Positions 790 through 43,865 of a stretch of 64,000 bases of DNA are shown piece by piece. The translations under genes and the position numbers were made by a program. The DNA is taken from positions 186,001 through 250,000 of the IMG/VR virus record IMGVR_UViG_3300032046_000001, one strand, 5' to 3'. Below the pieces are notes generated by a model. It did no database searches. It was not told where the DNA came from and was given only the letters and a program-made list of their open reading frames with translations. The first letter of the stretch is position 1; each line of letters opens with the position of its first letter.

Positions 790-1464
790 ATGGATGATAC
801 GCAAAAACAAAATTTTCAAATCGAGATATTTGAACAATACGGAGAACATTGTTTAAAAGACTGTCTTGGTTTAGTTGAAACTTCAGATCGAAAACCCAAG
901 GGTTATGTAGAAATATATGAAATGACTCCTGAAGGTGAAAAGAAATTAGTTGGTAAATCTAATCTTGTACTTTATACAGGACGAGAATTTGTAGCACAAT
1001 CTATTTTTGGTGTTGACAATCCCGCCGTAACATCATCATATAATGATCATATTTTTTGGTTTGGTGTTGGTGATGGTGGTGCTCCGATATTAGATCCATT
1101 GACACCAACTGCACCTACAAATACAGATACAGGTTTGGGAAATGATGTTGTAATAAGTTCTGATAGTACAAATGCTGATTATCGGATAACTCCAGTTGCT
1201 GGTTATTATAAGAAACCAATTTATTCAGTTGAATATCAACAAGATGTTTATAATAACAATTCATATTTAATAGCAAAAGTTACTATGATATTAGATGCTG
1301 GTGATTCAGATGGTTATAATATAAGTGAAGCTGGATTATTTGCCTCACCTTCATCCGCAGGTGGATCTTCTGGACCGTTTACATGTTACGCTAGGGTAAC
1401 TTTTCCATCTATTGTCAAAACTACAGCAAGAATTTTAACTATTATTTGGTATGTATTTTGTTGA
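790..1464 (+). CDS. Putative virion tail/baseplate-associated protein
   Basis: NLVLYTGRE...FGVGDG...ISEAGLF motifs resemble tail-fibre/baseplate attachment domains; lies upstream of sheath. Confidence 0.45.
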   Translation: MDDTQKQNFQIEIFEQYGEHCLKDCLGLVETSDRKPKGYVEIYEMTPEGEKKLVGKSNLVLYTGREFVAQSIFGVDNPAVTSSYNDHIFWFGVGDGGAPILDPLTPTAPTNTDTGLGNDVVISSDSTNADYRITPVAGYYKKPIYSVEYQQDVYNNNSYLIAKVTMILDAGDSDGYNISEAGLFASPSSAGGSSGPFTCYARVTFPSIVKTTARILTIIWYVFC

Positions 1465-1472
1465 AAAAAATT

Positions 1473-2252
1473 ATGAATAGTTTTTATATCTATATTTATT
1501 TAGATCCAAGAAAATCTGGACAATATTGTTATGGTGATTTTTGTTTTTTATTTGAACCAATCTATGTTGGAAAAGGAAAGAATGAAAGATGGAAAGATAT
1601 ATATCACAGAACAAAATATTTTAAAAATATACTAAATAAAATTAAAAATTCTGGGTTAGAACATATTGTTTTTAAATTATATGAAAATTTGAATGAAGGA
1701 CAATCTTTTGAAAAAGAAATTGAATTAATAGAAGAAATTGGAAGAAAAAATATAAAAACTGGATTTCTTGTTAATGAAACTATTGGTGGAGACGGATGTA
1801 GTGGATGTAAACGTAATAAAGAATCTATAAAACTAAGTTCTGAAAAACGAAGAAAAAATTTTCAAGAGATTAAAAATGAATTTGAAAATAGAGAATATAT
1901 TTTATTAACAACAGAAATAGAATATAAAAACGCACACCAAAAATTGAAATATATTTGTTCAAAAGGACATAATGGTTCTATTAGATGGAATGATTTTCAA
2001 CAAGGACAAGGTTGTTATATTTGTAAATATGAATCACATTCTAAAAATCAGAGAAAAAACTTTGATGAGATTAAAAAAGAATTTGAAAATAGAGGTTATA
2101 AATTATTAACGAAAGAAGAAGAATATAAAAATAATAAACAAAAATTAGATTATATTTGTCCAAAAGGCCATAATGGTTTAATAGATTGGAGTCATTTTCA
2201 TCGAGGACAAGGTTGTTCAAATAATATTTGTTTAATAAAAAATAAATTATAA
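1473..2252 (+). CDS. Free-standing GIY-YIG-like homing endonuclease with ICxKGH zinc-ribbon repeats
   Basis: YIYIYLDPRK...YVGKGK..R N-terminus; two KLxYICxKGH...W..F.xGQGC repeats; ATG at 1473 matches paralog starts. Confidence 0.75.
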   Translation: MNSFYIYIYLDPRKSGQYCYGDFCFLFEPIYVGKGKNERWKDIYHRTKYFKNILNKIKNSGLEHIVFKLYENLNEGQSFEKEIELIEEIGRKNIKTGFLVNETIGGDGCSGCKRNKESIKLSSEKRRKNFQEIKNEFENREYILLTTEIEYKNAHQKLKYICSKGHNGSIRWNDFQQGQGCYICKYESHSKNQRKNFDEIKKEFENRGYKLLTKEEEYKNNKQKLDYICPKGHNGLIDWSHFHRGQGCSNNICLIKNKL

Positions 2253-2358: not shown

Positions 2359-4317
2359 ATGTGTGCAGTTAATATTTCACCGGGCGTGTATACTAAAATT
2401 ATTGACCTGAGTACTTACGTCCAAGCAGTCCCAGGTACTATTGGTTTTATCTGTGCTCTGACCGAGAAAGGTAGAGACAATGAATTAATATTCGTTGGTT
2501 CTCGAAGTGAGTTAATTAGCGAATTTGGGGAACCCAACATTAATACTTATGGTGTTTCTTATGGTCAAGGGCTTTACGAAGCTTATAATTATCTTGGTGA
2601 GTCTGGATCTCTTTATTTTATGAGATGCCTCCCAGATGATGCAGCTTACTCTAATTTAAGACTTGATGCCACATTAGCTTCCACTGACAGTAGTGCGAGT
2701 ATTACTATTAGTTATGTTGATGATATTAATAACAATACAACTGATATTACTACAGCACTAACAGCATCGGGTGACACAAAACGACTCTGTATATTCTATC
2801 CTATTGGTCGTGGACAGTACTATAACGGCCTTGGTATCAGAATTACAGATCACTCTAATCCATTACTGTTCGGTGTATATGTTCTTGATATATATGAAAG
2901 ACAAAGTGATGGAACTGATGTTATCATAGAATCTTTTGATATTTCATTTGATCCTACAGCCAAAGACAATTCTGGTGCATCAATTTATATTGAAGATGTT
3001 TTAAAAACATATTCTTCAGTATTGAGGGCACAAGTTGGTTCTTCTGGTTATGATCTGATTGCAAAAGTATATGATAAAAATATTGGTACTATTAGTGTTG
3101 AATTAACTTCTGGTTCAGCTTCATTAACCGATGATAAACAAGATTTTTCAGATTGGGAAAATGTGACTGAAACTGGGTGGTCAACTTATATTGTTATCGC
3201 TAAAGACGGTAAAGGTAAAACCATCTATGGTTGGGCTGGCGCAGCTACTGGATCTGATGATGATGAAATTAAAGTTTTTAATTACAGAAACATCGATTCT
3301 ACAAATGTCACGGTTATACAAGCATGGTCTGGTGATACAGATACATTCGATGTTGATTCTGAAATTACTTATATTATTAAGAAATCAAATACATCAGTTT
3401 CAACAGCTTTCTTGTCATCTACACCGAAACCTTTGAAAAAGGGGTCAGATGGTGCTATACTTGATGGTACTGGAGATATTGTTACCGCTGAGGCAACTGA
3501 AGTTTTGGCTAATGGTTATGCTGGTACAATATACCCTGATATTTTAGATACTGATAATATTTATTTTACACTTATATTTGATGCTGGTTATCCAACCGAT
3601 GTCAAAGCACAAATTGTAACTTTAGCTCAAACTCGTGCTGACTGTATTGCTATCTGTGATAATGGTGATAATTCATCTTATACTACTTCAATATACGCCA
3701 GACAAAATAGTCATAAATACAATACTTATCTTGCTGCTTTGTATGAAGAATATAACAAGGTATATGATATATTCACTGGAAAAGATGTTTGGTTTTCACC
3801 AATATTTCATATGTCATATTTACTTCCTCGAAATGATGCAGTGTCAGAACTTTGGTATGCTGCTGCTGGTTTCAACAGAGCTTCTATTAGTACAATTAAA
3901 GAACTGAGATTCAATCCTAGATTGGGTCAACGTGATCAAATGTATCTTAATCAGATTAATCCTATTGTTAAATTTACAGCAGGTTATGTTGTTTGGGGTC
4001 AGTTGACTACACAATCCAAAGCTTCAGCTTTACAAGATTTGAATATTGCCAGATTGGTTCTTTATATTAAACGAGCATTGGAGCAATATTGTAGAAACTT
4101 TCTATTCGAGCAAAATGACCAAGTTACTTGGGGTCAAGTAAGTAATGATGTAACTTCTTTTCTTGAGTCAGTAAAAAAGAAACGTGGTCTTTATAGTTAT
4201 ACGGTAGATGTTGGGGCAAGTGATTATGAAAAGAAGACTAAAACATTTCATTGTAACGTCACTCTTGAACCAGTTAGAACTGTAGAGAAAGTCGAACTTA
4301 ATTTTTATATAAAATAA
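2359..4317 (+). CDS. Tail sheath protein (compact paralog)
   Basis: SPGVY N-terminus; C-terminal WYAAAGFNR, QINPI, VWGQLT, LNIARL, FEQND, EKVELNF sheath motifs. Confidence 0.92.
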   Translation: MCAVNISPGVYTKIIDLSTYVQAVPGTIGFICALTEKGRDNELIFVGSRSELISEFGEPNINTYGVSYGQGLYEAYNYLGESGSLYFMRCLPDDAAYSNLRLDATLASTDSSASITISYVDDINNNTTDITTALTASGDTKRLCIFYPIGRGQYYNGLGIRITDHSNPLLFGVYVLDIYERQSDGTDVIIESFDISFDPTAKDNSGASIYIEDVLKTYSSVLRAQVGSSGYDLIAKVYDKNIGTISVELTSGSASLTDDKQDFSDWENVTETGWSTYIVIAKDGKGKTIYGWAGAATGSDDDEIKVFNYRNIDSTNVTVIQAWSGDTDTFDVDSEITYIIKKSNTSVSTAFLSSTPKPLKKGSDGAILDGTGDIVTAEATEVLANGYAGTIYPDILDTDNIYFTLIFDAGYPTDVKAQIVTLAQTRADCIAICDNGDNSSYTTSIYARQNSHKYNTYLAALYEEYNKVYDIFTGKDVWFSPIFHMSYLLPRNDAVSELWYAAAGFNRASISTIKELRFNPRLGQRDQMYLNQINPIVKFTAGYVVWGQLTTQSKASALQDLNIARLVLYIKRALEQYCRNFLFEQNDQVTWGQVSNDVTSFLESVKKKRGLYSYTVDVGASDYEKKTKTFHCNVTLEPVRTVEKVELNFYIK

Positions 4318-4337: not shown

Positions 4338-4378
4338 ATAGGAAGTAGAGATAGAAATATCCTACTTCCTATATTTTT
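4338..4378 (+). terminator. Hairpin after sheath 1 (terminator and/or leader of the next endonuclease gene)
   Basis: ATAGGAAGTAG (4338-4348) / CTACTTCCTAT (4362-4372) 11-bp stem followed by a T-rich tract. Confidence 0.6.
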
Positions 4379-4399
4379 TAAAATTTTAAGGAGAATATA

Positions 4400-6430
4400 A
4401 TGTATAAATGTGAAATTTGTGGAAGAGAATTTAAAAATATATCGGCATTGGTTTCTCATATATCAAATCCAAATAAAAGTTGTAAAATATCAATAAAAGA
4501 ATACTATGATAAATATTTAAGAAAGGAAAATGAAGGATATTGTAAAATTTGTGGAAAAGAAACTGGTTTTCATAGTATCGTTAAAGGATATAAATATAAT
4601 ATATGTGGAGAATGTAAAAATATTAATCCAGAATATATAAAAAAACAAGTAAATTCTAGATATAAAACAATTAAAAAATTCAAATCAACTAAATTAGAAA
4701 AAAATTATCACAACTTTAATATTCAATGTAAAATATGTCATAAAAAATTTAAAAATTATAGTGGATTATCAAAACATATATACCAAATTCATAAAATTTC
4801 TATAGAAGATTATTATTTAAAATATATAAATTCAAATAAAAATATTTGTACTGTTTGTGATAAAGAAACCAATTTCGATTGTTTAGAAAGAGGATATTAT
4901 AAATTTCATAGAAATTGTTCCTCTAAAGATTTAGTAATAAGAAAAAAAATAAATAAAAGTTTTAAAGAAAGTTTCAAAAATATTAATCAAGAAAAAAGAA
5001 TTGAAAAATACAAAGAAACTAGAAATAAAAATAATGAAATTAAAATATTAAGAAAAAAATTAATTTTTATTTTAAAAATATTATCTATTAATAAAAGTAA
5101 TAAAAAACAATGTCAAATTTGTGGTGAAATATTCAATACATACAATGGTATAATTTCACATATACGTAAACATAAAATTGATTTAAAAAAATATTATGAT
5201 AAATTTTTTAAATTAGAAAATGAAGGAGTATGTTCAGTATCTGATTTAAAAACTAATTTTTCAAGTTTAGAAAACGGATATTGTCAATATTGTAAAAATT
5301 ATCAACAAAAAGATCTGAAATTAATAAATAATAATAAAATTTTACAATCTGGTAGACTAAGAGAAAAAATATTAAAATACCAAAATAATTTTAATATTGA
5401 ATTTATAAATATAGATAAAATACATAAAAATAATGATATGACAAATATTAAATGTTTGGATTGTGGTCATATATATCAAAATAGATGGTATAATGTAATA
5501 TTGGGATATGGTAAATGTCCAATATGTCATCCAAGAAATCAAAAAATTTCATCATATGAAATAGAAATATATAATTTTATAAGAGAAATAGATAAAGATA
5601 TAAAAATTTTAACTAGTTATTTTGGATTGATTAAAAATAAAAATAATAAAAGTTTAGAACTTGATATTTATATTCCAGAAAAAAATATAGCGATTGAATT
5701 TGATGGTCTATATTGGCATTCCGAAGAACAGGGAAAAGATAAAAATTATCATCTATTAAAAACAGACGAATGTAATAAAAAAGGAATAAGATTAATTCAT
5801 ATATTTGAGGATGAATGGGTTTTGAAACGTAATATATGTGAAAATAAATTAAAACAAATATTAAATTTTAATAAAAATATTAATCGAATTCATGCTCGTA
5901 AATGTGAAATAAAAGAAATTGATTCAAAATTAAAAAATGAATTTCTTAATAAATATCACTTACAAGGTTCAGATTCATCTAATATAAAATTAGGTGCTTT
6001 TTATAATAATGAATTAATATCAGTTATGACTTTTTCACATGGAAATATTTCAAAAGGTTCTAAAAATATTGAAGGAGTGTATGAATTAAATCGTTTTTGT
6101 TCTAATTATAATTATCATATTCCAGGTATAGCAAGTAAATTATTATCATATTTTAAGAAGAATTATGAGTGGAAAGAACTTTATTCTTATGCTGATAAAC
6201 GATGGAGTTTAGGAAATTTGTACTATAAACTTGGTTTTGAACTTGTTAGTGAATCATTACCAGAATATTGGTATGTAAGTAATAATGGAATAAAAAGAAT
6301 TCATAGATTCAATCTTCGTAAACGTCCAAATGAACCTAAAGATATTACAGAAGCAGTATTACGTTCTAAAGAAGGTTATCATAGAATATATGATTGTGGA
6401 CATTTAAAATTTAAGATGATTAAAACATAG
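4400..6430 (+). CDS. Hef-like homing endonuclease with C2H2 zinc-finger repeats and PD-(D/E)XK/Vsr-like domain
   Basis: Repeated CxxC...H...H fingers; ELDIYIPEKNIAIEFDGLYWH, IHIFEDEW, FLNKYHLQG, ELNRFC; free-standing between two sheath genes. Confidence 0.7.
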   Translation: MYKCEICGREFKNISALVSHISNPNKSCKISIKEYYDKYLRKENEGYCKICGKETGFHSIVKGYKYNICGECKNINPEYIKKQVNSRYKTIKKFKSTKLEKNYHNFNIQCKICHKKFKNYSGLSKHIYQIHKISIEDYYLKYINSNKNICTVCDKETNFDCLERGYYKFHRNCSSKDLVIRKKINKSFKESFKNINQEKRIEKYKETRNKNNEIKILRKKLIFILKILSINKSNKKQCQICGEIFNTYNGIISHIRKHKIDLKKYYDKFFKLENEGVCSVSDLKTNFSSLENGYCQYCKNYQQKDLKLINNNKILQSGRLREKILKYQNNFNIEFINIDKIHKNNDMTNIKCLDCGHIYQNRWYNVILGYGKCPICHPRNQKISSYEIEIYNFIREIDKDIKILTSYFGLIKNKNNKSLELDIYIPEKNIAIEFDGLYWHSEEQGKDKNYHLLKTDECNKKGIRLIHIFEDEWVLKRNICENKLKQILNFNKNINRIHARKCEIKEIDSKLKNEFLNKYHLQGSDSSNIKLGAFYNNELISVMTFSHGNISKGSKNIEGVYELNRFCSNYNYHIPGIASKLLSYFKKNYEWKELYSYADKRWSLGNLYYKLGFELVSESLPEYWYVSNNGIKRIHRFNLRKRPNEPKDITEAVLRSKEGYHRIYDCGHLKFKMIKT

Positions 6431-6498: not shown

Positions 6499-9400
6499 AT
6501 GGCAAATATATCAGCGGGTGTATATACCAAAATTATTGATCTCTCCACTTTCGTACAAATAGTTCCGAGTACTATTGGTTTTATTTGTGCGTTGACTGAG
6601 AAAGGTGAGGACAATAAACTTAAATTTCTTGGTTCAAGAAGTGAACTGGTTGATGAATTTGGTTCACCAAATATTTCAACATATGGACAACAATATGGGC
6701 AAGGTCCGTATGTTGCTTACAATTATTTAGGCGAGTCTGGTTCTTTATATTTTATGAGATGTCTTCCAGATGATGCTACATACTCCAATTTACGAATATA
6801 TGCGAATTCTGATACAACTACCGCACTTTTTATTGATTATGTTCCAAGTTTGAATTCTACTGCTGATATAACAACCGCAATGCAAGTATTTGGAAATAAT
6901 ACACCACTTGTTATTTTTTATCCGATAGGTAGAGGTACTTATTATAATAATATAGGAATTGAAATTACAGAAGATGAAACACATGCTGATGAGGGTGTTT
7001 ATAATATAGACATATATGAAACTCAATCTGATGGATCATATACTTTAATTGAATCTTTTAAAATATCATTTGATAGTTCCGCAATTAGTACAAATCCAGG
7101 TGAATCAATTTATGTTGAACATGTTTTAGAAACATATTCTAAAGTTCTTAGAGCTAAAGTTGGTAAAGATGGTTTTGATTTAATCGATAAAATATATACA
7201 ACAGAAGTTCATACAATAACTCCAACTGGACAAGATGTTACTGATGTAGATGTTTCTTCATCTGGATCTACTAGTTATATAGATAGTACGAGCATAATAA
7301 ATATAGACTCAACGGAAATAATAATTATTGATTCTACTACTGTTGAACATGTTCAAGTATATGATGGTTCTTCGTGGGCAACTACACCATCTTTAAATCA
7401 AGCAAGAAGAGGTTTGGCTGGTTGTGGTAGTACCGTTGGTGCCTTAAGTGTGGGTGGTGGAACTACGGCTGTAGTGGCTACTACAGAGAAGTGGAATAGC
7501 CATACTTTTGCTGGATTGTGGTTTACAACTTCAGCTTTAAATACTGCGAGATATTATTTAGCCGGATGTGGTACTGTAACTGCGAGTTTAAGTTTTGGTG
7601 GTGGAACTGTTGCCGTTGTAAATACAACTGAAAAATGGAATGGTTCTTCGTGGGCAACTACTGGTAGTTTAACTCAAACTAAAAGTAATGTGTCTGGATG
7701 TGGAACTACAACTGATGCGTTATGTATGGGTGGTGGAACTACGGCTGTAGTAAATACTACAGAGAAGTGGAACGGTTCTACTTGGGCAACCACAAATGCA
7801 CTAAATGTGGCTAAATATCGTTTAGCATCATGCGGAACAACTTCTGATGCTCTTAGTTTTGGTGGAAATACTAATAGTGCTTCTGATTCGGCTAGTACAA
7901 GTATAACAGAAATATGGAATGGTTCAACTTGGTATACAGGATCTAATTTAAATCAAGCTAGATATTATTTAGCTGGATGTGGAACTACATCAGACGCCTT
8001 AGCTTTTGGTGGTTGTTCAACAGCATCGTCTGCGTATGTTAATACTACTGAAAAGTATAGTGGTGCTACACTTGGTTATATTTGGGCAAGTACTTCTAGT
8101 TTAAATATTGTAAAACATCTTGCTGCCGGTTCTGGTAATATGACAGATGCTCTATCTTTTGGTGGATATAGTGGTTCAACTACTAGTATAACTGAAAAAT
8201 GGAATAATGTGGTGTGGAGCACTGTTAATAATTTAAATCAGGCAAGATTTTCTCTTTGTGGATGTGGAACTACAAGTGATTCGTTATCTTTTGGAGGAAG
8301 CACCACAAATGTAGTATTAAAAAATACAGAACGATGGAATGGATCATCGTGGTCAACTACAGCAAACATTAATACTGCACGTCATCTTGCTGCTGGTTGT
8401 GGAATAATTTCTTCTGCTCTCGTACTTGGTGGGAATACTAACGCTGCTGATGGTTCAAGTCAAAATGCATTAACAGAAGTTTGGACTGGATATTCTTGGT
8501 ATACTGCAACCAATTTAAATGAATCTAAATATTATATCGCTGCGTGTGGTACAACTTCTGGTGCTTTATGTTTTGGTGGTTCAACAGCAGAAACAAGTGC
8601 GTATGTAAATACAACTGAAAAATGGTCAACATCAGTATTTGATTATATTTGGACTACAACATCTGTTTTAAATCAAGGTAGATATCAAACATCAGGTTGT
8701 GGTGATTCAAACAATGCATTGGTTTTTGGTGGATATACTGGTGCTGTCATAAACACTACAGAAATATGGTCAGTATCTTCTTGGGCAACTACTACAAATA
8801 TGACACTAGGAAGAAATCATTTATCTGGTTGTGGTAATACAACAGATGCATTAAATTTTGGTGGTGTTAGTTCAACAACACGAGCAACAACTGAAATTTG
8901 GAATGGTTCTTCGTGGGCAACAACATCAAATTTAAATACTGCGAGATTTTCATTGACTGGATGTGGGGTTACATCAGGTGCATTAAGCATTGGTGGAGAA
9001 ACAGGAACAGCACCAGTTAATAATGTTGAAATATGGAATGGTTCTTCATGGGTAACTACAACGGCAATAAGTGTTGCTAAATATGGATTGGCTGGATGTG
9101 GTACAACAACTGACGCTTTAAGTTTTTGCGGTTGGACAGCATCCGTAACAGTTGCAACAACAGAAATATGGAATGGTTCTTCGTGGGCAACTACTACTTC
9201 ATCAACACAACAGAGATATTACTTAGCGGGTTGCGGAACCACTTTAGATGCTTTAAATTTTGGTGGTAGTACTAGTTTTAGTCAAAGACGAACAACAACT
9301 GAAAAATGGAACGGTTCATTATGGGCAACTGTAAATGGTTTAAATGTAGCTAAAGATTACTTGGCTGGATGTGGTGCTACTAATGCAGCATTAAGTTTTG

Positions 9401-12400
9401 GTGGTTCTTCTGGTTCATCACCATATGATATTACAGAAAAATATTTACAATTGGACATTGGATCGTGGGTAACAACATCTGCGTTAAATACCGCTAGAAG
9501 AGGTTTGGCTGGATGTGGAACTACTTCTAATGCCTTAAGTTTTGGTGGATATAGTGGTGCATCAATAAATGTAACCGAAATATGGAATGGATTGCTTTGG
9601 ACAACCGGAAATCCTTTAAATATTCCAAGATATAATTTATCAGGGTGTGGTGCCACTAATGCAGCATTAAGTTTTGGTGGATTTATGGGTTCAACAGTAT
9701 CAACTACAGAAAAATACGCAGAATTCTCAGTCGGGTCGTGGGTAACTACAACAGCGTTAACTTCTACAAAACGTTCTTTGGCTGGATGTGGAACAACTTC
9801 TGACGCTTTATGTTTTGGTGGATATACTGGTTCTGCAACTGGTATTAACGTAACTGAATTATGGAATGGTTCGTTATGGGCTACTACAAATATTTTAAAT
9901 CAAACTAGATATGGTTTGGCTGGTTCTGGTGATTCTCTTAACGCATTATCTTTTGGTGGATATACTGGAGCAGTAATCAATACAACTGAAATATGGACAC
10001 AAACCTATTTTGATTATTGGACATTAACTTCATCATTGAATCAAGCCAGAGAATACTTAGCCTCAAGTGGAGATACATCAGGTGCTTTAGCGTTTGGTGG
10101 TGGAACTACTGCTGTTGTTAATTCAACTGAAAAGTGGAGTGGTTCTTCTTGGGTTACTACCTCGGCTTTAAATACTGCTATAAGAGGTTTGGCTGGATGT
10201 GGAACTGTAACTGATACATTGTCTATTGGTGGTGGGACTACTACGGTTGTTAATACTACTGAAAAATGGAATGGAAGTTCTTGGACAACAACATATGGAT
10301 TAAATCAATCTCGATTTGATTTGGCGGCATGTGGTACTACATCAGACGCCCTATGTTTTGGTGGTGGAACTACTGCTGTTGTAAATACTACTGAAAAATA
10401 TTCTCAAGTTGTATCTAATATATGGGCTACTACAAATAGTATGACCGTTGGAAGAAAGAAACTTGTCGGTATTGGTACTGTTTATGATGCTTTGTCTATG
10501 AGCGGTTCAACTGGAACAAATAAAACAGAAATATGGAATGGTTCTTCTTGGGCAACTACAACTAATTTAAACTATGGTAGATATTTTGCAGCCGGTTCTG
10601 GAATAACTTCTGATGCGCTTATTTTTTCAGGTAATACAACACCGTCAACAGAAAAATGGAATGGTAGTACATGGAGCACTACAAATGATATTAATAATAT
10701 ATTGCTCGCTCCTGCTGGTGTTGGAACTACGAGTGCCACAATATCTTTTGGTGGTGGAACGACAACGGATGGTAGTGGTATTCCTATTACTTTTTCAAAA
10801 CCCGGTCAAATATGGTATGGATCTGGTTGGTATACTGCATCATTATTAAATGTTGGAAGAGCATTACTTGCTATGAGCGGAACAACATCTGATGCTCTCG
10901 CTTTTGGTGGAAATACAGCAGGTGGATATACAGCACCTACCACTGCAACAGAAAAATTTAGTATTGCAACCCAAAATAATATATGGGCAACAACATCTAA
11001 TATGGTTGTAGCTAAACAAGAACCTGAAGAATGTGGTGATGTTAATAGTAGTTTAGTATTTGGTGGATATACTACTGATGTATCTAATAAAACCGAAATA
11101 TGGAATGGTTCATCATGGGCAACTACAACCAATATGGTTGCTACAATACGAAAACATGCAGGTTGTGGTACAACTTCTAATGCTCTTAGTTTCGGTGGTC
11201 AAACTACAAATAAAACAGAAATATGGAATGGTTCTTCTTGGGCAACTACCAGCAATCTAGATCAAAATCGTATTGGTCTTGCTGGATGTGGAACAACATC
11301 TGATACTCTTGGTTTCGGTGGTGGTACTACTGTGGATGGATATGGTACAGTAATCGGATGGATCACTTCTTCAGTAATCTGGAATGGATCAGTTTGGACT
11401 ACAACTGCTGGACTAAATCAACCAAGATCTATGTTAGCTGGTTGTGGTAATACAACAGATGCTCTTTCTTTTGGTGGAACAACGGCTGGAGGATATACTG
11501 GTGAAGTTACGACTACTGAATTATGGAATGGATCATCATGGACTACAACAACTGCTACCACATTTGCAAGATTTTCAAATTCGGGTTCTGGTAATACATC
11601 ATCAGCATTATGTTTTGGTGGTGGTCCGGTATATTCAACACCAACAACTATCGTTGATTATTGGAATGGATCGATATGGGCAACAACATCAGTATTAAAT
11701 ATTGCACGAAATGATGGTGCTGGTAGTGGAACGGGATCAAATGCTCTTAGTTCTGGTGGTTATACTGGCAGTAGTGTAAATACTACGGAAAAATATACAC
11801 AGTTTTCTATTGGAGCATGGGCAACAACAAGTGCTTTAAATTTATCCCGTTATGGTTTGGCTGGTTGTGGAACTACAAATGCATCTCTTGCCTATGGAGG
11901 TTCAACAGGTACTGGTGTTCCAAGATTAAGTACGGAAATATGGAATGGTTCATCATGGGCGACTACAATGGATCAAACTGTAGCACGACAATATCAAGCT
12001 GGTTGTGGAACAACTGCTGCTGCTTTAAGTTTTGGTGGTGAAACATATGCAAGTTCGTCTTATAATACAACAGAAATTTGGCTTCCAGTTTTATATGGCG
12101 CGTGGGCAACTACAAGTGCTTTAAATCAAGCCAAATCTAAATTATCAGGTTGTGGAACTACTACAGACGCTTTAAGTTTTGGTGGTGATTCTAATAGTGG
12201 TAATGTTGTATCTACAACTGAAATATGGAATGGTTCTTCATGGGCTACTACATCAGCTTTAAATGTCGCTAGACAATATTTAGCAGGTTGTGGGACAACA
12301 TCCGACGCTCTAAGTTTTGGTGGTGGAACTACTGCTCAAGTAAATACTACTGAAAAATGGTATGCTACATATCATACTAACACAATAGTTCATCATATAG

Positions 12401-13647
12401 AAACACCGGAAATTATTCATGTTGTTACACCACATGTTATTCATACGATTACACCAGTCATTACTGATGTATTTCAATTAATTGATAATAATCAAGATTT
12501 TACTCCTTGGTCAACAGATCCAGAAACTGGTACTGCTCAATATATTGCAATTGTTAAAGATTCTTTCAACAGAACAATATGGGGATGGTTAGGATCTACA
12601 TCAGAATACGGAACAGTAGTTAATATATGGAAAAATAATAATTTAGATACTTCAGATAGAGGTTGGAATGGTGATACTTCAACTTTTGATTATAATGATG
12701 AAAATATAACTTATCAAATTAAAAAATCTGATGTTTCAATTCCAGATTTATTTTCAGTTAAGACTCTTAGAAAAGGTTCTGATGGATCATTAGTTCTAAA
12801 AGGGACTTTTGATGAAGATATTGCTACTCAAATATTATCACAAGGTTATGCTGGATTGATTGACAGTAATGTTCTTGATATTGATGGTACTTATTTTAGT
12901 TTGGTATATGATGCTGGTTATCCAAAAGATGTTAAAGATCAAATTGTAGGTTTAGCACAAGCCAGAGGTGACTGTGTAGCTATCATTGATAATGGTGACA
13001 ATATTTCAGTTAATAGTTCTATTTTATCACGTAAAAATAATTATCAATATAATACTTATTATGCCTCTATATTTGAATCATATAATAGAATATTTGATAT
13101 TTTTACAGAACGACAAATTTGGTTTTCACCATGTTATCACTTAGGTTATATATTACCAAGAAATGATAAGATAGGAGAACTTTGGTTTGCTGCTTCGGGT
13201 AATAATAGAGGTAGTTGTAGAGATATTAAAGAACTTAGATTCAGTCCAAATCAATCACAACGTGATATGTTATATGGTTATCAAATAAATCCGATAATTA
13301 AACAAAATACTGATTATGTTTTATGGGGTCAATTAACATCACAAAGTAAAGCATCAGCTTTACAAGATCTAAATATAGTTAGATTACTTCTTTATATTAA
13401 ACGTGGTGTTCAACAATATGCAAATAATTTTATATTTGATGACAATTCTCAATTAGTTTGGAACACTGTAAGGAACGATGTTACCGACTTCTTAGAACAA
13501 ATTAAAAAGAGACGTGGGTTAATTAATTACACAATCAATGTTGGTGCTACACTGTTAGAAATAAAAAATAAAACTTTTCATGTTGATATTATATTAGAAC
13601 CTACAGGTACTACGGAAAAAATTGAACTGAATTTTTATATCAAATAA
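6499..13647 (+). CDS. Second tail sheath paralog with a large Kelch-like beta-propeller insertion
   Basis: N- and C-terminal parts align with sheath 2359-4317 (SAGVYTKIIDLSTFVQ...; LWFAASGNNRG, QINPI, LWGQLTSQSKASALQDLNI, EKIELNFYIK); aa 293-1954 are repeats. Confidence 0.9.
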   Translation: MANISAGVYTKIIDLSTFVQIVPSTIGFICALTEKGEDNKLKFLGSRSELVDEFGSPNISTYGQQYGQGPYVAYNYLGESGSLYFMRCLPDDATYSNLRIYANSDTTTALFIDYVPSLNSTADITTAMQVFGNNTPLVIFYPIGRGTYYNNIGIEITEDETHADEGVYNIDIYETQSDGSYTLIESFKISFDSSAISTNPGESIYVEHVLETYSKVLRAKVGKDGFDLIDKIYTTEVHTITPTGQDVTDVDVSSSGSTSYIDSTSIINIDSTEIIIIDSTTVEHVQVYDGSSWATTPSLNQARRGLAGCGSTVGALSVGGGTTAVVATTEKWNSHTFAGLWFTTSALNTARYYLAGCGTVTASLSFGGGTVAVVNTTEKWNGSSWATTGSLTQTKSNVSGCGTTTDALCMGGGTTAVVNTTEKWNGSTWATTNALNVAKYRLASCGTTSDALSFGGNTNSASDSASTSITEIWNGSTWYTGSNLNQARYYLAGCGTTSDALAFGGCSTASSAYVNTTEKYSGATLGYIWASTSSLNIVKHLAAGSGNMTDALSFGGYSGSTTSITEKWNNVVWSTVNNLNQARFSLCGCGTTSDSLSFGGSTTNVVLKNTERWNGSSWSTTANINTARHLAAGCGIISSALVLGGNTNAADGSSQNALTEVWTGYSWYTATNLNESKYYIAACGTTSGALCFGGSTAETSAYVNTTEKWSTSVFDYIWTTTSVLNQGRYQTSGCGDSNNALVFGGYTGAVINTTEIWSVSSWATTTNMTLGRNHLSGCGNTTDALNFGGVSSTTRATTEIWNGSSWATTSNLNTARFSLTGCGVTSGALSIGGETGTAPVNNVEIWNGSSWVTTTAISVAKYGLAGCGTTTDALSFCGWTASVTVATTEIWNGSSWATTTSSTQQRYYLAGCGTTLDALNFGGSTSFSQRRTTTEKWNGSLWATVNGLNVAKDYLAGCGATNAALSFGGSSGSSPYDITEKYLQLDIGSWVTTSALNTARRGLAGCGTTSNALSFGGYSGASINVTEIWNGLLWTTGNPLNIPRYNLSGCGATNAALSFGGFMGSTVSTTEKYAEFSVGSWVTTTALTSTKRSLAGCGTTSDALCFGGYTGSATGINVTELWNGSLWATTNILNQTRYGLAGSGDSLNALSFGGYTGAVINTTEIWTQTYFDYWTLTSSLNQAREYLASSGDTSGALAFGGGTTAVVNSTEKWSGSSWVTTSALNTAIRGLAGCGTVTDTLSIGGGTTTVVNTTEKWNGSSWTTTYGLNQSRFDLAACGTTSDALCFGGGTTAVVNTTEKYSQVVSNIWATTNSMTVGRKKLVGIGTVYDALSMSGSTGTNKTEIWNGSSWATTTNLNYGRYFAAGSGITSDALIFSGNTTPSTEKWNGSTWSTTNDINNILLAPAGVGTTSATISFGGGTTTDGSGIPITFSKPGQIWYGSGWYTASLLNVGRALLAMSGTTSDALAFGGNTAGGYTAPTTATEKFSIATQNNIWATTSNMVVAKQEPEECGDVNSSLVFGGYTTDVSNKTEIWNGSSWATTTNMVATIRKHAGCGTTSNALSFGGQTTNKTEIWNGSSWATTSNLDQNRIGLAGCGTTSDTLGFGGGTTVDGYGTVIGWITSSVIWNGSVWTTTAGLNQPRSMLAGCGNTTDALSFGGTTAGGYTGEVTTTELWNGSSWTTTTATTFARFSNSGSGNTSSALCFGGGPVYSTPTTIVDYWNGSIWATTSVLNIARNDGAGSGTGSNALSSGGYTGSSVNTTEKYTQFSIGAWATTSALNLSRYGLAGCGTTNASLAYGGSTGTGVPRLSTEIWNGSSWATTMDQTVARQYQAGCGTTAAALSFGGETYASSSYNTTEIWLPVLYGAWATTSALNQAKSKLSGCGTTTDALSFGGDSNSGNVVSTTEIWNGSSWATTSALNVARQYLAGCGTTSDALSFGGGTTAQVNTTEKWYATYHTNTIVHHIETPEIIHVVTPHVIHTITPVITDVFQLIDNNQDFTPWSTDPETGTAQYIAIVKDSFNRTIWGWLGSTSEYGTVVNIWKNNNLDTSDRGWNGDTSTFDYNDENITYQIKKSDVSIPDLFSVKTLRKGSDGSLVLKGTFDEDIATQILSQGYAGLIDSNVLDIDGTYFSLVYDAGYPKDVKDQIVGLAQARGDCVAIIDNGDNISVNSSILSRKNNYQYNTYYASIFESYNRIFDIFTERQIWFSPCYHLGYILPRNDKIGELWFAASGNNRGSCRDIKELRFSPNQSQRDMLYGYQINPIIKQNTDYVLWGQLTSQSKASALQDLNIVRLLLYIKRGVQQYANNFIFDDNSQLVWNTVRNDVTDFLEQIKKRRGLINYTINVGATLLEIKNKTFHVDIILEPTGTTEKIELNFYIK
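7375..12360 (+). repeat. 36 tandem ~46-aa Kelch-like coding repeats
   Basis: Manual count of units WxTTxxLNxARxxLAGCGTxxxALxFGG...TExWNGSS; the GG doublet and W spacing are Kelch-like. Confidence 0.85.
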
Positions 13648-13839: not shown

Positions 13840-13893
13840 AGATGTTCTAAATAATTTTCTGGTTCAGAAAAAAAAAATAAAATAATTAAAAGA

Positions 13894-13923
13894 AGGAGGA
13901 ACAGGATTATTCCTGTTCCTCCT
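13894..13923. terminator. Intrinsic terminator at the convergence of the + and - blocks
   Basis: Perfect 13-bp stem AGGAGGAACAGGA-ttat-TCCTGTTCCTCCT; long T-rich tract follows on the - strand. Confidence 0.8.
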
Positions 13924-14146
13924 CAATTCTGTAATATTTTTGATTTGAATATTTAAGTTCTACATCTTTAAATATTTCAAAATGATACTCTGGCCTTTTT
14001 TCATCAATTAATCTTCTTTTTAGTTCCTTATCAAATACCATAGTATAAGTATTATCTGAAAAAATATGAAATTCTACTGTTATATAATGTTTATCGATTA
14101 ATTTAGAAATACATGCATACTTAATTTTATTTTGTACTAAAATATC
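13907..14146 (-). other. 79-codon open frame without a clear start, in frame behind a TGA
   Basis: DILVQNKIKYACISKLIDKH...RIEEEQE* directly follows the TGA at 14149-14147. Confidence 0.4.
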
Positions 14147-36431: not shown

Positions 36432-37346
36432 TTGAAGTGTAAAATATGTGAAAAAGAACTTAAAGATTCATTAAAATCTTTGGCACAACATATATTAAAT
36501 AATCATAAAGAAATTGGAATAAAAAATTATTATGATGAATATTTTAAAAAAGAAAAAGAGAATGTTTGTTTAGAATGTGGAAAAGAAACTAAATTTGAAG
36601 GTTTGAAAAAAGGTTATAGACAGTTTTGTTCAACCAAATGTTCAAATTCAAATAAAAATAAATTAGAAAAAACAAGAGAAATAAATTTAAATAAGTATGG
36701 TGGTACGGGATTTCAAGTCAAAGAACTTTCTGATAAATCGAGAAAAACAACCAAAGATAAATATGGAGTAGAATTTGGAAGTCAGTCTAAAGAAGTTCAA
36801 AAGAAACAAATAGAAACCTTTAGAAAAACTTTAGGTGTCGATTGGCCATCCCAAAATAGAGTGGTAAGAGAAAAACAAGTTAAAACATTACAACATAAAT
36901 ATAATACTGATAATCCAATGAAGGTTGAAAAAATTAAAAATAAACAACATGAAAGTATGTTGAAGAAGTATGGCGTAGAAACTTATTCTCAGACACAAGA
37001 GTGGAGAAATAAGATGTTAAATGGTTTTGCTTCTCATGTATATTCTTTTGTTAAAAATCCCTCAAAACCACAGGTTAAAACTTTTGAACTTGTAAAAAGT
37101 ATATTCGGAGAGGCTGTTTTAAATTTTCCTATATATGAAATAAATAGAATTATTGACGTTGCAATACCATCCTTAAAGATTGCGATTGAATATGATGGTT
37201 CTTACTGGCATAAAGATGAAAATTTAGATATAATTCGTCAAAGAGAAGTGGAAAATTTAGGATGGAAATTTATACGGTACAGAGATCGTATTCCGAGTTT
37301 AGAAGAACTTAAATACGACATTGATAAAATAACAAACATTAGCTAA
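36432..37346 (+). CDS. Putative homing endonuclease (zinc finger, KYG repeats, PD-(D/E)XK/Vsr-like domain)
   Basis: CKIC..H..H, repeated KYGVE..SQ, IDVAIPSLKIAIEYDGSYWH; TTG start with GGAGG SD. Confidence 0.7.
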   Translation: MKCKICEKELKDSLKSLAQHILNNHKEIGIKNYYDEYFKKEKENVCLECGKETKFEGLKKGYRQFCSTKCSNSNKNKLEKTREINLNKYGGTGFQVKELSDKSRKTTKDKYGVEFGSQSKEVQKKQIETFRKTLGVDWPSQNRVVREKQVKTLQHKYNTDNPMKVEKIKNKQHESMLKKYGVETYSQTQEWRNKMLNGFASHVYSFVKNPSKPQVKTFELVKSIFGEAVLNFPIYEINRIIDVAIPSLKIAIEYDGSYWHKDENLDIIRQREVENLGWKFIRYRDRIPSLEELKYDIDKITNIS

Positions 37347-43040: not shown

Positions 43041-43865
43041 ATGAATAATTTTTATATTTATGTTTATTTAGATTCCAGAAAGCCTGGAAAACATTGTTAT
43101 GATAATATCTGTTTTTTATATGAACCAATTTATATTGGAAAAGGAAAAAATGATAGATGGAAAGTTATTAATGGAAGAACTCCAATTTTTATTAATAAAT
43201 TTAATAAAATTAAAAAATATGGGTTAAAACCAATTGTTATAAAGTTATATGAAAATTTAAATGAAAATTTATCTCTTGAACTAGAAAAAAAATTAATTAT
43301 TGAAATTGATAAAATAAATCCTGGAATTCTTATTAATATGACCAGTGGTGGTGAAGGAACGAGCGGGTATATACACACAGATGAAACAAAAAAAAGATTA
43401 TCAGAGATAAGGAAAAATAAACAAATATCATTAGGTCAAAATAATCCAATGTTTGATATTCATCGTTTTGGGAATAATGCACCACATTTTGGAAAAAAAC
43501 ATTCAGAAGAATCAAAAATTAAAATAAGTGAAAATAGAAAAGGAAAAAATACTGGAAAAGATAATCATAATTTTGGAAAACATCTTCCTAAAGAAACAAG
43601 AAATAAAATTAGTGAAAAACATAAAGGAAAATATATTTCACAAGAAACAAAAGTAAAACTATGTGAAAAACGTAAAAATAAAAAAGGAAATAATAGTCCA
43701 AACCATAAACTAACAGAACAACAAGTTATCCAAATAAAAATATTATTAAAAGAAGGAAATTTAACTCAACAAGAAATTGCCGATATGTTTGGAGTTAGTT
43801 CTATAACAATTTCAAAAATAAAAACAGGAAAAATTTGGTCGCATATTAAATTGGGAGAAAATTAA
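43041..43865 (+). CDS. GIY-YIG-like homing endonuclease with NUMOD3 repeats and HTH
   Basis: YIYVYLDSRK...YIGKGK; FGKKHSEESK repeats; LTQQEIADMFGV. Confidence 0.8.
   Translation: MNNFYIYVYLDSRKPGKHCYDNICFLYEPIYIGKGKNDRWKVINGRTPIFINKFNKIKKYGLKPIVIKLYENLNENLSLELEKKLIIEIDKINPGILINMTSGGEGTSGYIHTDETKKRLSEIRKNKQISLGQNNPMFDIHRFGNNAPHFGKKHSEESKIKISENRKGKNTGKDNHNFGKHLPKETRNKISEKHKGKYISQETKVKLCEKRKNKKGNNSPNHKLTEQQVIQIKILLKEGNLTQQEIADMFGVSSITISKIKTGKIWSHIKLGEN

What the first reader, a model, noticed from the sequence alone, without database searches (positions are those of the whole stretch)
6499..13647. Second tail sheath gene carries a ~1660-aa insertion of 36 Kelch-like repeats
Seen: two sheath paralogs in tandem, separated only by a homing endonuclease. 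The second has complete sheath N- and C-terminal parts but, where sheath 1 reads KVYDKNIG...DDKQDFSDW, it has 36 repeats of ~46 aa (aa 293-1954). Established: Kelch repeats form 6-bladed beta-propellers, so 36 repeats would give six propellers; sheath insertion domains usually face outward. Inference: a minor sheath subunit that displays a chain of propellers on the tail surface for adhesion or receptor/glycan binding.
Basis: partly seen in the sequence, partly recalled or inferred. Interest (0 to 1): 0.8.

Follow-up and report, generated by a model that had tools for sequence, protein, structure and literature searches.

The report
Tail sheath subunit carrying six Kelch propellers
An uncultured 312-kb sediment phage has, next to its normal tail-sheath gene, a second complete sheath gene with 36 Kelch blades (six six-bladed propellers) spliced into its outward-facing part, most likely giving the contractile tail built-in adhesive "hairs".

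Summary
ORF 6499-13647 (2382 aa) is an intact paralogue of sheath 1 (2359-4317). Its N part is 63% and its C part 53% identical to sheath 1, and it is interrupted by 36 repeats of 41-51 aa (aa 284-1950) between two beta-rich linkers.

The repeats fail Pfam's Kelch thresholds. A profile of them nevertheless hits only six-bladed Kelch domains in the PDB (KLHL17, E 2e-27). An AlphaFold model of 12 repeats (pLDDT 89) superposes on six-bladed Kelch propellers at Z 35. In homologues the repeats come in blocks of exactly six.

The array is not a misassembly. DNA copies are only 60-75% alike, and an independent assembly tiles the region at even depth.

The insertion splits the part that matches the surface-exposed protease-resistant fragments of the T4 and phiKZ sheaths.

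It is a lineage trait. Relatives carry sheath-Kelch fusions with 6, 12 or about 36 blades, and one contig has three tandem sheath paralogues.

The paralogue keeps the N- and C-terminal ends, which in solved sheaths link subunits, but diverges and recombines far faster than sheath 1.

The adhesin role, the copy number per tail and the position in the tail are inferred, not shown. I rate it a new variant of a known kind.

The parts
2359..4317 (+). Sheath 1: the plain 652-aa tail sheath, presumed major subunit
   Evidence: PHROG tail sheath E 4e-74 and Pfam Phage_sheath_1C. 685 hits at E <= 0.001; the 120 listed are 59-96% identical. Strong purifying selection against the closest relative (dN/dS 0.07).
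4338..4381 (+). Terminator-like hairpin plus U-run directly after the sheath 1 stop codon
   Evidence: RNA fold -19.2 kcal/mol, z -5.0. Equivalent hairpins follow sheath 1 in L001 (z -6.6) and, with a different stem sequence, in L002 (z -4.4). Its function is inferred.
4400..6430 (+). Homing endonuclease (C2H2 zinc fingers plus HNH-family), inserted between the two sheath genes
   Evidence: phrog_3339 E 7e-92, phrog_559 E 2e-88, zf-C2H2. GC is 17-22%. The 91%-identical relative L001 keeps only a short remnant of about 200 nt.
6499..13647 (+). Sheath 2: 2382-aa sheath paralogue with the Kelch insertion (whole gene)
6499..7221 (+). Sheath 2 N part (aa 1-241): the N-terminal end (the subunit-linking arm in solved sheaths), core and first outer domain
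   Evidence: 63% identity to sheath 1. The first 40 aa are 82% identical.
7207..7347 (+). N-side linker or stalk (aa 237-283), rich in Thr/Ile/Asp/Ser, with short tandem units
   Evidence: It is 16 aa shorter in L001. In the third paralogue of L072 it is expanded to about 25 hexapeptide repeats.
7348..8190 (+). Kelch blades 1-6 (aa 284-564): propeller 1
   Evidence: AlphaFold pLDDT >90. NS1-BP Kelch aligns to model residues 26-303 at Z 34.7.
8191..9024 (+). Kelch blades 7-12 (aa 565-842): propeller 2
   Evidence: Same model. The model's pTM of 0.67 is what two rigid domains with a loose relative orientation would give.
9025..9852 (+). Kelch blades 13-18 (aa 843-1118): propeller 3, by extrapolation
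   Evidence: Repeat segmentation and the six-blade module seen in homologues.
9853..10647 (+). Kelch blades 19-24 (aa 1119-1383): propeller 4, by extrapolation
10648..11514 (+). Kelch blades 25-30 (aa 1384-1672): propeller 5, by extrapolation. It spans the second copy of the 44-nt exact repeat (11206-11249); the first copy (10516-10559) lies in blade 24.
11515..12348 (+). Kelch blades 31-36 (aa 1673-1950): propeller 6, by extrapolation
12349..12477 (+). Closing strand and C-side linker or stalk (aa 1951-1993), rich in Ile/Val/His/Thr/Pro
12478..13647 (+). Sheath 2 C part (aa 1994-2382): second outer beta-barrel domain, core and the C-terminal end (the subunit-linking arm in solved sheaths)
   Evidence: 53% identity to sheath 1. 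Phage_sheath_1C hit. The last 12 aa are 83% identical to sheath 1.

Best explanation
Sheath 2 is a genuine, assembly-competent paralogue of the tail sheath protein. It is built into the contractile sheath together with the plain sheath 1, probably in fewer copies.

From a loop of its outer beta-barrel domain it projects a two-stranded, beta-rich stalk. The stalk carries six six-bladed Kelch propellers of about 180 kDa in all; at a typical propeller size this would be a string of beads roughly 20-30 nm long (my estimate, not computed).

The propellers act as accessory adhesins. They would bind host-surface or matrix glycans or proteins reversibly and so raise the chance of productive adsorption, giving a genetically hard-wired 'hairy tail'.

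Shown: the fusion, the Kelch six-blade modules, the retained sheath core and terminal ends, the insertion within the outer region, conservation across a lineage, copy numbers of 6, 12 and about 36 blades, and fast mosaic evolution. Inferred: incorporation into the virion, stoichiometry, position in the tail, and binding function.
For: Fusion and intact ORF.

Sheath identity: PHROG and Pfam hits. 156 of 185 family-invariant residues are kept, and the N-terminal 40 aa and C-terminal 12 aa are the parts most like sheath 1 at 82-83% identity. In the AlphaFold model of the 12-blade orthologue the sheath core is confident and matches solved sheaths (P1 at Z 16, KP1, pyocin, eCIS).

Outward placement: the protease-resistant outer fragments of phiKZ gp29 (Z 13) and T4 gp18 (Z 9.3) align to model ranges 19-914 and 17-921, which bracket the insertion at 160-800. 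A small beta-barrel is formed by a strand just before the insertion plus about 95 residues after it. A published survey finds that extra sheath domains lie away from the tube (PMC9230969).

Kelch and six blades: the profile hits only six-bladed Kelch domains in the PDB, best E 2.3e-27. The AlphaFold model of 12 repeats has pLDDT 89.2. Superposition gives Z 34-35 and rmsd about 2.2 A over about 257 of 285 residues of six-bladed Kelch propellers. Homologues carry the repeats in blocks of exactly six. The complete third paralogue in L072 has five blocks of six detected blades and one of five, separated by linkers.

Lineage trait: fusions with 6 (P0170), 12 (L002/L003/L004, P0169) and 36 or about 36 blades. 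All repeat-bearing paralogues form one clade with support 1.0.

Accessory, host-range-like behaviour: between two phages whose sheath 1 is 96% identical (dS 0.34), the sheath 2 N part is 75% identical (dS 1.05) and the first blades are 45% identical. One orthologue is frameshifted. Sister clades build tails with sheath 1 alone.

Lower dosage: a conserved hairpin plus U-run lies between sheath 1 and sheath 2.

Adhesin context: some homologous propeller chains carry Peptidase_S74, Phage_fiber_2, LamG, PKD or tail-fibre PHROG signals. Kelch proteins are virion components of jumbo phages, including the hairy-tailed CBB.
Against: There is no direct evidence that the protein is in virions, and none on its copy number or position.

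The insertion itself could not be modelled in the context of the sheath (pLDDT about 30). The outward direction therefore rests on domain equivalence, not on a lattice fit.

No ligand or binding site was identified, and Kelch propellers can also be enzymes.

Sheath 2 carries its own conserved substitutions at about 20 positions that are invariant in the sheath 1 family. It may therefore not be freely interchangeable with sheath 1 in the lattice.

My rough volume estimate (not a tool result) does not exclude full occupancy, so 'minor' rests only on the hairpin and on dispensability arguments.
Confidence: 0.55

Rival explanations
1. Specialised ring model. Sheath 2 (and sheath 3 in relatives) does not mix along the sheath. 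It forms one or a few defined hexameric layers at the baseplate or neck end, as Pvc3/Pvc4 and Afp4 do in extracellular contractile injection systems. The tail would then carry six (or 12) discrete propeller fibres that work as tail fibres or whiskers, rather than a coat of hairs.
For: Tandem sets of two or three sheath paralogues resemble the eCIS arrangement, and eCIS entries with several sheath chains are among the matches. Sheath 2 shares about 20 paralogue-specific substitutions at otherwise invariant core and outer positions with its 12-blade orthologue, which suggests its own contact surfaces. The distinct s2-type and s3-type subclades suggest distinct roles.
Against: Both terminal ends of sheath 2 are nearly identical to those of sheath 1, so nothing marks it as an end-specific subunit. 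No partner such as an initiator or terminator variant was identified. The layer-specific placement in eCIS is recalled from the literature and was not tested here.
Confidence: 0.25
2. Enzymatic decoration. The propellers are catalytic, like galactose-oxidase- or mutarotase-type Kelch enzymes, or they degrade surface polymers. The tail surface would then modify or digest capsule or biofilm matrix rather than merely bind it.
For: Some phage Kelch propellers found by structure search are annotated 'galactose oxidase'. Phage virion proteins often carry depolymerases (general knowledge).
Against: The best sequence and structure matches are protein-binding BTB-Kelch domains and designed propellers, not enzymes. 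Thirty-six near-equivalent blades with no extra catalytic domain and no conserved metal-site motif were seen. The most variable columns lie just after the conserved Arg and in the segment that follows the GG doublet. Assigning these to the binding-face loops is my inference from Kelch topology; if right, it is typical of binding surfaces.
Confidence: 0.08
3. Sole or major sheath builder. Sheath 2 polymerises on its own or dominates the lattice, producing a dense bottlebrush tail, perhaps in a subset of virions.
For: It has a complete core and both terminal ends. My rough volume estimate (inference, not a tool result) does not forbid full occupancy.
Against: Sheath 1 is retained and strongly conserved in every relative. 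Sheath 2 is absent from sister clades and is frameshifted in one relative. A terminator-like hairpin precedes it. The synthesis cost would be very high.
Confidence: 0.07
4. Artefact or dead gene: the repeat block is an assembly expansion, or the ORF is a decaying duplicate that is not used.
For: One 44-nt exact repeat, 690 nt apart, leaves a formal ambiguity of five blades in short-read graphs.
Against: Depth is even, and the independent Logan contigs have no mismatches. The repeat node has twice the depth and the 706-nt piece between the two copies (10530-11235) about single depth. DNA copies are only 60-75% identical. A 7.1-kb ORF stays open. The sheath 2 N part has dN/dS 0.18 and the first blades 0.41. 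The same architecture occurs in several other contigs.
Confidence: 0.02

Closest known systems
Phage tail sheath proteins with extra outer domains (T4 gp18, phiKZ gp29, and the multi-domain 'type 3' sheaths of large phages; Evseev et al. 2022, PMC9230969)
   Same: The core is made of the N- and C-terminal parts, with additional domains inserted in the middle and facing away from the tube. Larger genomes tend to have larger sheaths. An adhesion role for the extra domains has been proposed.
   Different: The extra domains described are Ig-like sandwiches or small helical domains. Among the sheath relatives recovered here, the largest without this insertion is 1566 aa. Here the insertion is a chain of one, two or six Kelch propellers (up to 1750 aa) on a stalk, carried by a second paralogue while a plain sheath gene is kept.
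Duplicated sheath genes: Pseudomonas jumbo phage PaBG (two sheath proteins, 38% identical; PMC7412058) and eCIS with Afp2/3/4 or Pvc2/3/4
   Same: Several sheath paralogues arose by duplication and are encoded together. In eCIS they co-assemble in one sheath (recalled from the literature; the multi-chain PDB entries appear).
   Different: None of those paralogues carries a propeller chain. Whether the paralogues here occupy defined layers is unknown.
Six-bladed Kelch beta-propellers (Keap1, KLHL2/3/12/17/20, NS1-BP; designed SAKe6 proteins)
   Same: Repeats of about 46 aa with a GG doublet, paired aromatic residues, a conserved Arg and four strands per blade, forming a closed six-blade ring. 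Profile E 2e-27 and structural Z 35.
   Different: They fall below every Pfam Kelch threshold. The propellers are joined head to tail without BTB/BACK partners. A Cys sits in an xCG motif in 27 of 36 blades. The host protein is a viral structural protein.
Kelch proteins and hair-like tail appendages of jumbo phages (CBB, PhiPA3, Noxifer, Erwinia phage Y3)
   Same: Kelch propellers are virion components in jumbo phages. Some jumbo phages have hairs along the contractile tail whose genes are not identified (PMC5259590, PMC13282480).
   Different: There the Kelch proteins are separate polypeptides, and no link to the sheath gene has been reported. Here the anchor is the sheath subunit itself. No micrograph exists for this uncultured phage.
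Giant stand-alone propeller-chain proteins of metagenomic contigs (P0001-P0047, phrog_27227)
   Same: Same repeat family (up to 48% identity) and the same six-blade modules, with 6 to 42 blades. They often occur as tandem giant genes.
   Different: They have no sheath N or C parts. Some instead end in Peptidase_S74, Phage_fiber_2, LamG or PKD domains.

Membership tests
Contractile tail sheath protein (gp18-like; Pfam Phage_sheath_1 / Phage_sheath_1C) | C-terminal sheath domain recognised by curated models | tested here: met
   Phage_sheath_1C scores 27.3 bits against a cut-off of 26.9 at aa 2284-2382. PHROG tail sheath families score E 2.6e-59 and 3.4e-35.
Contractile tail sheath protein (gp18-like; Pfam Phage_sheath_1 / Phage_sheath_1C) | Conserved core formed jointly by the N- and C-terminal parts, including the terminal ends that link subunits in solved sheaths | tested here: met
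   N part 63% and C part 53% identical to sheath 1. 156 of 185 family-invariant residues are kept, and the termini are 82-83% identical. The model of the orthologue's core matches solved sheaths at Z 12-16.
Contractile tail sheath protein (gp18-like; Pfam Phage_sheath_1 / Phage_sheath_1C) | Polymerises around the tail tube in the virion and contracts | not testable with these tools
   The phage is uncultured, and no proteome or micrograph exists.
Kelch-repeat beta-propeller | Match to curated Kelch repeat models at their thresholds | tested here: not met
   No Kelch family at E <= 0.01 for the whole protein. Only faint Kelch_6 hits (E 0.24-2.9) on fragments.
Kelch-repeat beta-propeller | Sequence homology to proven Kelch domains | tested here: met
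   The profile of 66 twelve-blade segments against PDB sequences finds 83 matches at E <= 1. All 60 shown are Kelch domains or designed Kelch propellers, the best being KLHL17 at E 2.3e-27, with motifs aligned in register.
Kelch-repeat beta-propeller | Four-stranded blades closing into a six- (or seven-) bladed ring | tested here: met
   In the AlphaFold model (pLDDT 89.2) there are four strands per repeat. Superposition gives Z 34-35 and rmsd about 2.2 A over about 257 residues of six-bladed Kelch propellers. Homologues carry blocks of six. This is a prediction, not a solved structure.
Multi-paralogue sheaths (eCIS Afp2/3/4, Pvc2/3/4; phage PaBG) | Two or more diverged sheath genes in one tail gene cluster | tested here: met
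   The window has sheath 1 and sheath 2. L002/L072 has three: 649 aa, 1262-1274 aa depending on the start codon called, and 2565 aa.
Multi-paralogue sheaths (eCIS Afp2/3/4, Pvc2/3/4; phage PaBG) | Paralogues co-assemble, each at a defined place in the sheath | not testable with these tools
   This needs virion structure or proteomics.
Phage receptor-binding or adhesin module | Rapid, mosaic evolution relative to neighbouring structural genes | tested here: met
   Sheath 1 is 96% identical with dS 0.34. The sheath 2 N part is 75% identical with dS 1.05, and the blades are 45% identical, in the same pair of genomes.
Phage receptor-binding or adhesin module | Demonstrated binding to a host surface ligand | not tested
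   Host and ligand are unknown.

The most novel reading that the evidence does not exclude
A lineage of jumbo phages builds a heteropolymeric contractile sheath from two or three paralogues. The enlarged ones place Kelch-propeller fibres of programmed length (one, two or six propellers) at defined positions on the tail. The sheath itself would then become the scaffold of the host-recognition apparatus, with the blade number, changed in units of six, tuning reach and avidity. This would be the first molecular explanation of hair-like appendages on contractile tails, and a phage counterpart of the multi-sheath architecture of extracellular injection systems.
Probability: 0.3. Interest if true: 0.8.

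Novelty: new variant of a known kind. Interest (0 to 1): 0.66.

Why it matters
Sheath proteins are usually treated as a uniform contractile polymer whose extra domains are small Ig-like decorations. Here a sheath subunit serves as the anchor for a fibre of about 180 kDa, in a gene family whose propeller number changes in whole six-blade modules (6, 12, 36) and which evolves like a receptor-binding protein.

If the protein is in the virion, three things follow. It gives a simple genetic route to 'hairy' contractile tails, whose molecular basis is still open in cultured jumbo phages. It shows that phage sheaths, like eCIS sheaths, can be heteropolymers. And it marks a natural, permissive display site on a contractile sheath that tolerates more than 1700 inserted residues.

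At 2382 aa (2565 aa in a relative) these are by far the largest sheath proteins seen in the searches made here.

Tried and rejected
- Megablast of the gene and tblastn of a 700-aa repeat block against 50,697 phage records found nothing. The lineage has no cultured or deposited relative. The nearest isolates, phiR1-37, BpSp and the Staphylococcus jumbo phages, share only 24-28% identity in the sheath.
- Pfam gave no significant Kelch hit even at E 10 on fragments. This was overturned by the profile and structure tests, so Pfam's silence was a sensitivity limit.
- The whole-length search of the word-index protein collection (about 5.8 billion sequences) found 47 giant repeat proteins, none with sheath parts. 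A C-part search restricted to proteins of at least 1310 aa found only one unrelated large sheath, P0048, without Kelch repeats. The 968-1274-aa fusions were missed because of the length window. They turned up later through gene neighbourhoods and the exhaustive search.
- In the AlphaFold run on the nearly whole 12-blade orthologue, the insertion came out at pLDDT about 30, so no model shows sheath core and propellers together.
- The metagenome scan with sheath 2-specific peptides returned only the two contigs already known.
- I looked for a period of six in blade-to-blade identity within the window's protein and found none; mean identity is about 0.47 at all lags. The six-blade phase therefore rests on the model, on homologues, and on the count being 6 x 6.
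- I considered that the two linkers pair as an equal-length antiparallel ribbon, because both are 16 aa longer in the window than in L001 or L002. The third paralogue weakens this: its N linker is about 165 aa and its C linker about 70 aa.
- A steric argument for 'minor subunit' was dropped, because my rough volume estimate does not exclude full occupancy.
- The sigma-70 promoter scan was at background level, 71 sites against 71.9 expected, and was not used.
Full report
**What is there**

The window is part of a 312,420-bp viral contig, IMGVR_UViG_3300032046_000001 (100% match; also Ga0315289_10000013). It comes from a sediment metagenome.

On the + strand lie three ORFs:
- a 652-aa tail sheath gene at 2359-4317 ('sheath 1');
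- a 676-aa zinc-finger/HNH homing endonuclease at 4400-6430, with GC 17-22%;
- an intact 2382-aa ORF at 6499-13647 ('sheath 2').

BLASTP aligns sheath 1 aa 4-246 with sheath 2 aa 2-241 (63% identity) and sheath 1 aa 256-652 with sheath 2 aa 1994-2382 (53%, E 2e-137). About 1750 residues therefore replace roughly ten residues of sheath 1.

The window also holds baseplate hub and wedge genes, a large terminase and many more homing endonucleases. The nearest cultured phages share only 24-28% identity in the sheath: phiR1-37, Bacillus BpSp and the Staphylococcus jumbo phages.

**The repeats**

Segmentation gives 36 tandem repeats of 41-51 aa (mean 46.3) from aa 284 to 1950, followed by one extra closing strand. 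The consensus is TE-k-W-N-G-S ... W-a-T-T ... L-N ... R ... L-A-G-C-G-T-T ... A-L-s-F-G-G. The most variable columns lie just after the conserved Arg and in the segment that follows the GG doublet, which also varies in length.

**Is the array real?**

At the DNA level the copies are only 60-75% identical, and Tandem Repeats Finder sees almost nothing.

Logan's independent contigs of the probable source run tile 7000-12900 with zero mismatches at a depth of 14.5-15.5. They break only at a 44-nt exact repeat (10516-10559 and 11206-11249). That node has a depth of 30.9, about double, and the 706-nt piece between the two copies (10530-11235) has 11.9. This is the pattern expected if the repeat is crossed twice and the loop once.

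A run from a different study carries contigs covering 10530-12750: 10530-11189 with 4 differences and 11220-12750 at about 96.5% identity (54 differences in 1531). I regard misassembly as excluded, apart from a formal five-blade ambiguity that long reads would settle.

**Kelch or not?**

Pfam does not call the repeats Kelch. The only strong family hit is phrog_27227, of unknown function (E 4e-257).

A profile built from 66 twelve-blade segments was searched against all PDB chain sequences. It found 83 matches at E <= 1, and all 60 shown are Kelch domains or designed Kelch propellers: KLHL17 at E 2.3e-27, then KLHL12/2/3/20, Keap1, NS1-BP and the designed SAKe6 proteins. The Arg, GG and aromatic motifs align in register.

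AlphaFold2 on aa 270-860 (12 blades), using that alignment, gave a mean pLDDT of 89.2 and pTM of 0.67, with four strands per repeat. Structural alignment gave Z 34-35 and rmsd about 2.2 A over about 257 of about 285 residues of six-bladed Kelch propellers. NS1-BP aligns to model residues 26-303, which is blades 1-6 plus the first strand of blade 7.

Comparative evidence agrees. In 47 giant homologues the repeats occur in blocks of exactly six: 6, 12, 18, 24, 30 or 42 blades, separated by linkers or by a gap about 10 aa longer at every sixth repeat.

I found no period of six in blade similarity inside the window's own protein. The 6 x 6 partition of blades 13-36 is therefore an extrapolation.

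**Where the insertion sits**

AlphaFold2 on the nearly complete 12-blade orthologue (L002, aa 63-1262) modelled the sheath core with confidence but left the insertion at pLDDT about 30.

The core matches solved sheaths: P1 at Z 16, plus KP1, pyocin and several extracellular injection systems. The protease-resistant, surface-exposed fragments of phiKZ gp29 (Z 13, rmsd 2.7-2.9 A) and T4 gp18 (Z 9.3) align to model ranges 19-914 and 17-921. Both ranges bracket the insertion at 160-800.

A small beta-barrel is formed by a strand just before the insertion plus the roughly 95 residues after it. The insertion is therefore an excursion from a loop of an outer domain. This fits the published rule that extra sheath domains lie away from the tube (PMC9230969). 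A fit into a sheath lattice could not be done here.

**A lineage trait**

Sheath 1 belongs to a large, uncultured family; 685 hits at E <= 0.001, of which the 120 listed are 59-96% identical.

In the closest subclade, a second sheath gene follows sheath 1:
- L001 (91% DNA identity) has it directly downstream, with only a remnant of the endonuclease between them.
- L002/L003/L004 carry a paralogue of 1262-1274 aa (depending on the start codon called) with 12 blades.
- The same contig (L072) then encodes a complete third paralogue of 2565 aa. Thirty-five full blades were detected, in five blocks of six and one of five, with linkers between the blocks. Its N-side linker is expanded to about 25 hexapeptide repeats.
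- The exhaustive search of 1.84 billion representatives added a complete 968-aa sheath with exactly six blades (P0170) and a 12-blade one split by a frameshift (P0169).

The copy numbers seen are 6, 12, 36 and about 36.

On a tree of the N part, all repeat-bearing paralogues form one clade (support 1.0). It divides into s2-type and s3-type groups, and the window's gene is s2-type.

More distant relatives (66% identity or less) show a single sheath gene within 10 kb. None of the 47 giant stand-alone propeller proteins has sheath parts.

**Signs of function**

Sheath 2 keeps 156 of 185 positions that are at least 95% conserved in the sheath 1 family. Its N-terminal 40 and C-terminal 12 residues are the segments most like sheath 1 (82-83% identity); in solved sheaths these ends link neighbouring subunits (general knowledge of sheath structures). 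About 20 of its departures from family-invariant residues are shared with the 12-blade orthologue, forming a paralogue-specific signature.

Between the window and L001:
- sheath 1 is 96% identical (dN/dS 0.07, dS 0.34);
- the sheath 2 N part is 75% identical (dS 1.05, dN/dS 0.18);
- the first blades are 45% identical.

The higher dS points to exchange between phages, as is usual for host-range determinants.

A strong hairpin followed by a U-run lies directly after the sheath 1 stop codon in the window, in L001 and, with a different stem sequence, in L002 (z -4.4 to -6.6). I read it as a partial terminator that lowers the dosage of the downstream paralogue. This is inference.

Homologous propeller chains occur in proteins with Peptidase_S74, Phage_fiber_2, LamG, PKD or weak tail-fibre signals. 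Kelch propellers are virion proteins in several jumbo phages, including CBB, whose contractile tail bears hairs of unknown genetic origin. A 2026 review still lists such hairs without naming a gene for them.

**Most likely mechanism and rivals**

- Most likely (0.55): sheath 2 enters the sheath lattice with sheath 1 and displays six Kelch propellers on a stalk as an accessory adhesin.
- Main rival (0.25): the enlarged paralogues form defined rings, as the minor sheath proteins of extracellular injection systems do, giving six or twelve discrete fibres.
- Less likely: a catalytic role for the propellers (0.08), sheath 2 as the dominant builder (0.07), and artefact or dead gene (0.02).

Virion incorporation, stoichiometry, position and ligand are all untested.

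**Comparison and novelty**

Three things are already known: extra outward domains on sheaths (Ig-like or helical), duplicated sheath genes (PaBG; eCIS), and Kelch virion proteins in jumbo phages.

Their combination appears to be unreported. Here a sheath paralogue serves as the anchor for a modular chain of one, two or six Kelch propellers, conserved across a lineage, with up to three paralogues in tandem. My literature searches found no such report. I rate it a new variant of a known kind.

Noticed in passing
window 1446-2252, 4400-6430, 36432-37346, 43041-43865, 46397-47383, 55643-56446, 57726-58595: At least seven homing-endonuclease ORFs (HNH, GIY-YIG-like or zinc-finger types) lie in 64 kb, several wedged between structural genes (sheath, baseplate wedge, terminase). 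The one between the sheath genes has only 17-22% GC.
   Followed up: partly
L001:3960-4180 compared with window 4400-6430: The closest relative keeps only a remnant of about 200 nt of the endonuclease between sheath 1 and sheath 2, with the same 'YKCEICG' zinc-finger start. This looks like a snapshot of the homing-endonuclease gain and decay cycle. Other relatives (L009, L013, L073) also have an endonuclease or a gap of 2-3 kb at this junction.
   Followed up: partly
L072:11277-18974 (aa about 235-395 of the 2565-aa third sheath paralogue): The N-side linker is expanded to about 25 tandem hexapeptides (D-T/S-T-S/A/C-I/L-I/V). The pattern is reminiscent of left-handed beta-helix hexapeptide repeats and could form a rigid rod. 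Pfam finds nothing.
   Followed up: partly
L074:132-3930: A 12-blade sheath-Kelch orthologue is split into 1020-aa and 248-aa ORFs by a frameshift, which is either a sequencing error or a decaying gene.
   Followed up: no
P0131: A sheath 62% identical to sheath 1 lies on a 255,557-bp contig deposited in a MAG named Candidatus Thorarchaeota archaeon. This is either a misbinned jumbo phage or a hint about the hosts of this phage group.
   Followed up: no
window 7348-12348: 27 of 36 blades carry a Cys in an xCG motif (consensus A-G-C-G). This is unusual for Kelch blades. A possible structural, redox or metal role was not examined.
   Followed up: no
L070 and the contig of P0007: Other metagenomic contigs encode three giant propeller-chain proteins in tandem (2516, 1428 and 2730 aa) without sheath parts. 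This is a parallel expansion of the same module in a different context.
   Followed up: partly
L002:1761-3392: The relative's contig encodes an RtcB RNA ligase interrupted by an intein (precomputed Pfam hits).
   Followed up: no
window 13893-13924 (- strand): A strong terminator-like hairpin (14 pairs) lies where the + strand sheath genes meet the - strand gene block.
   Followed up: no
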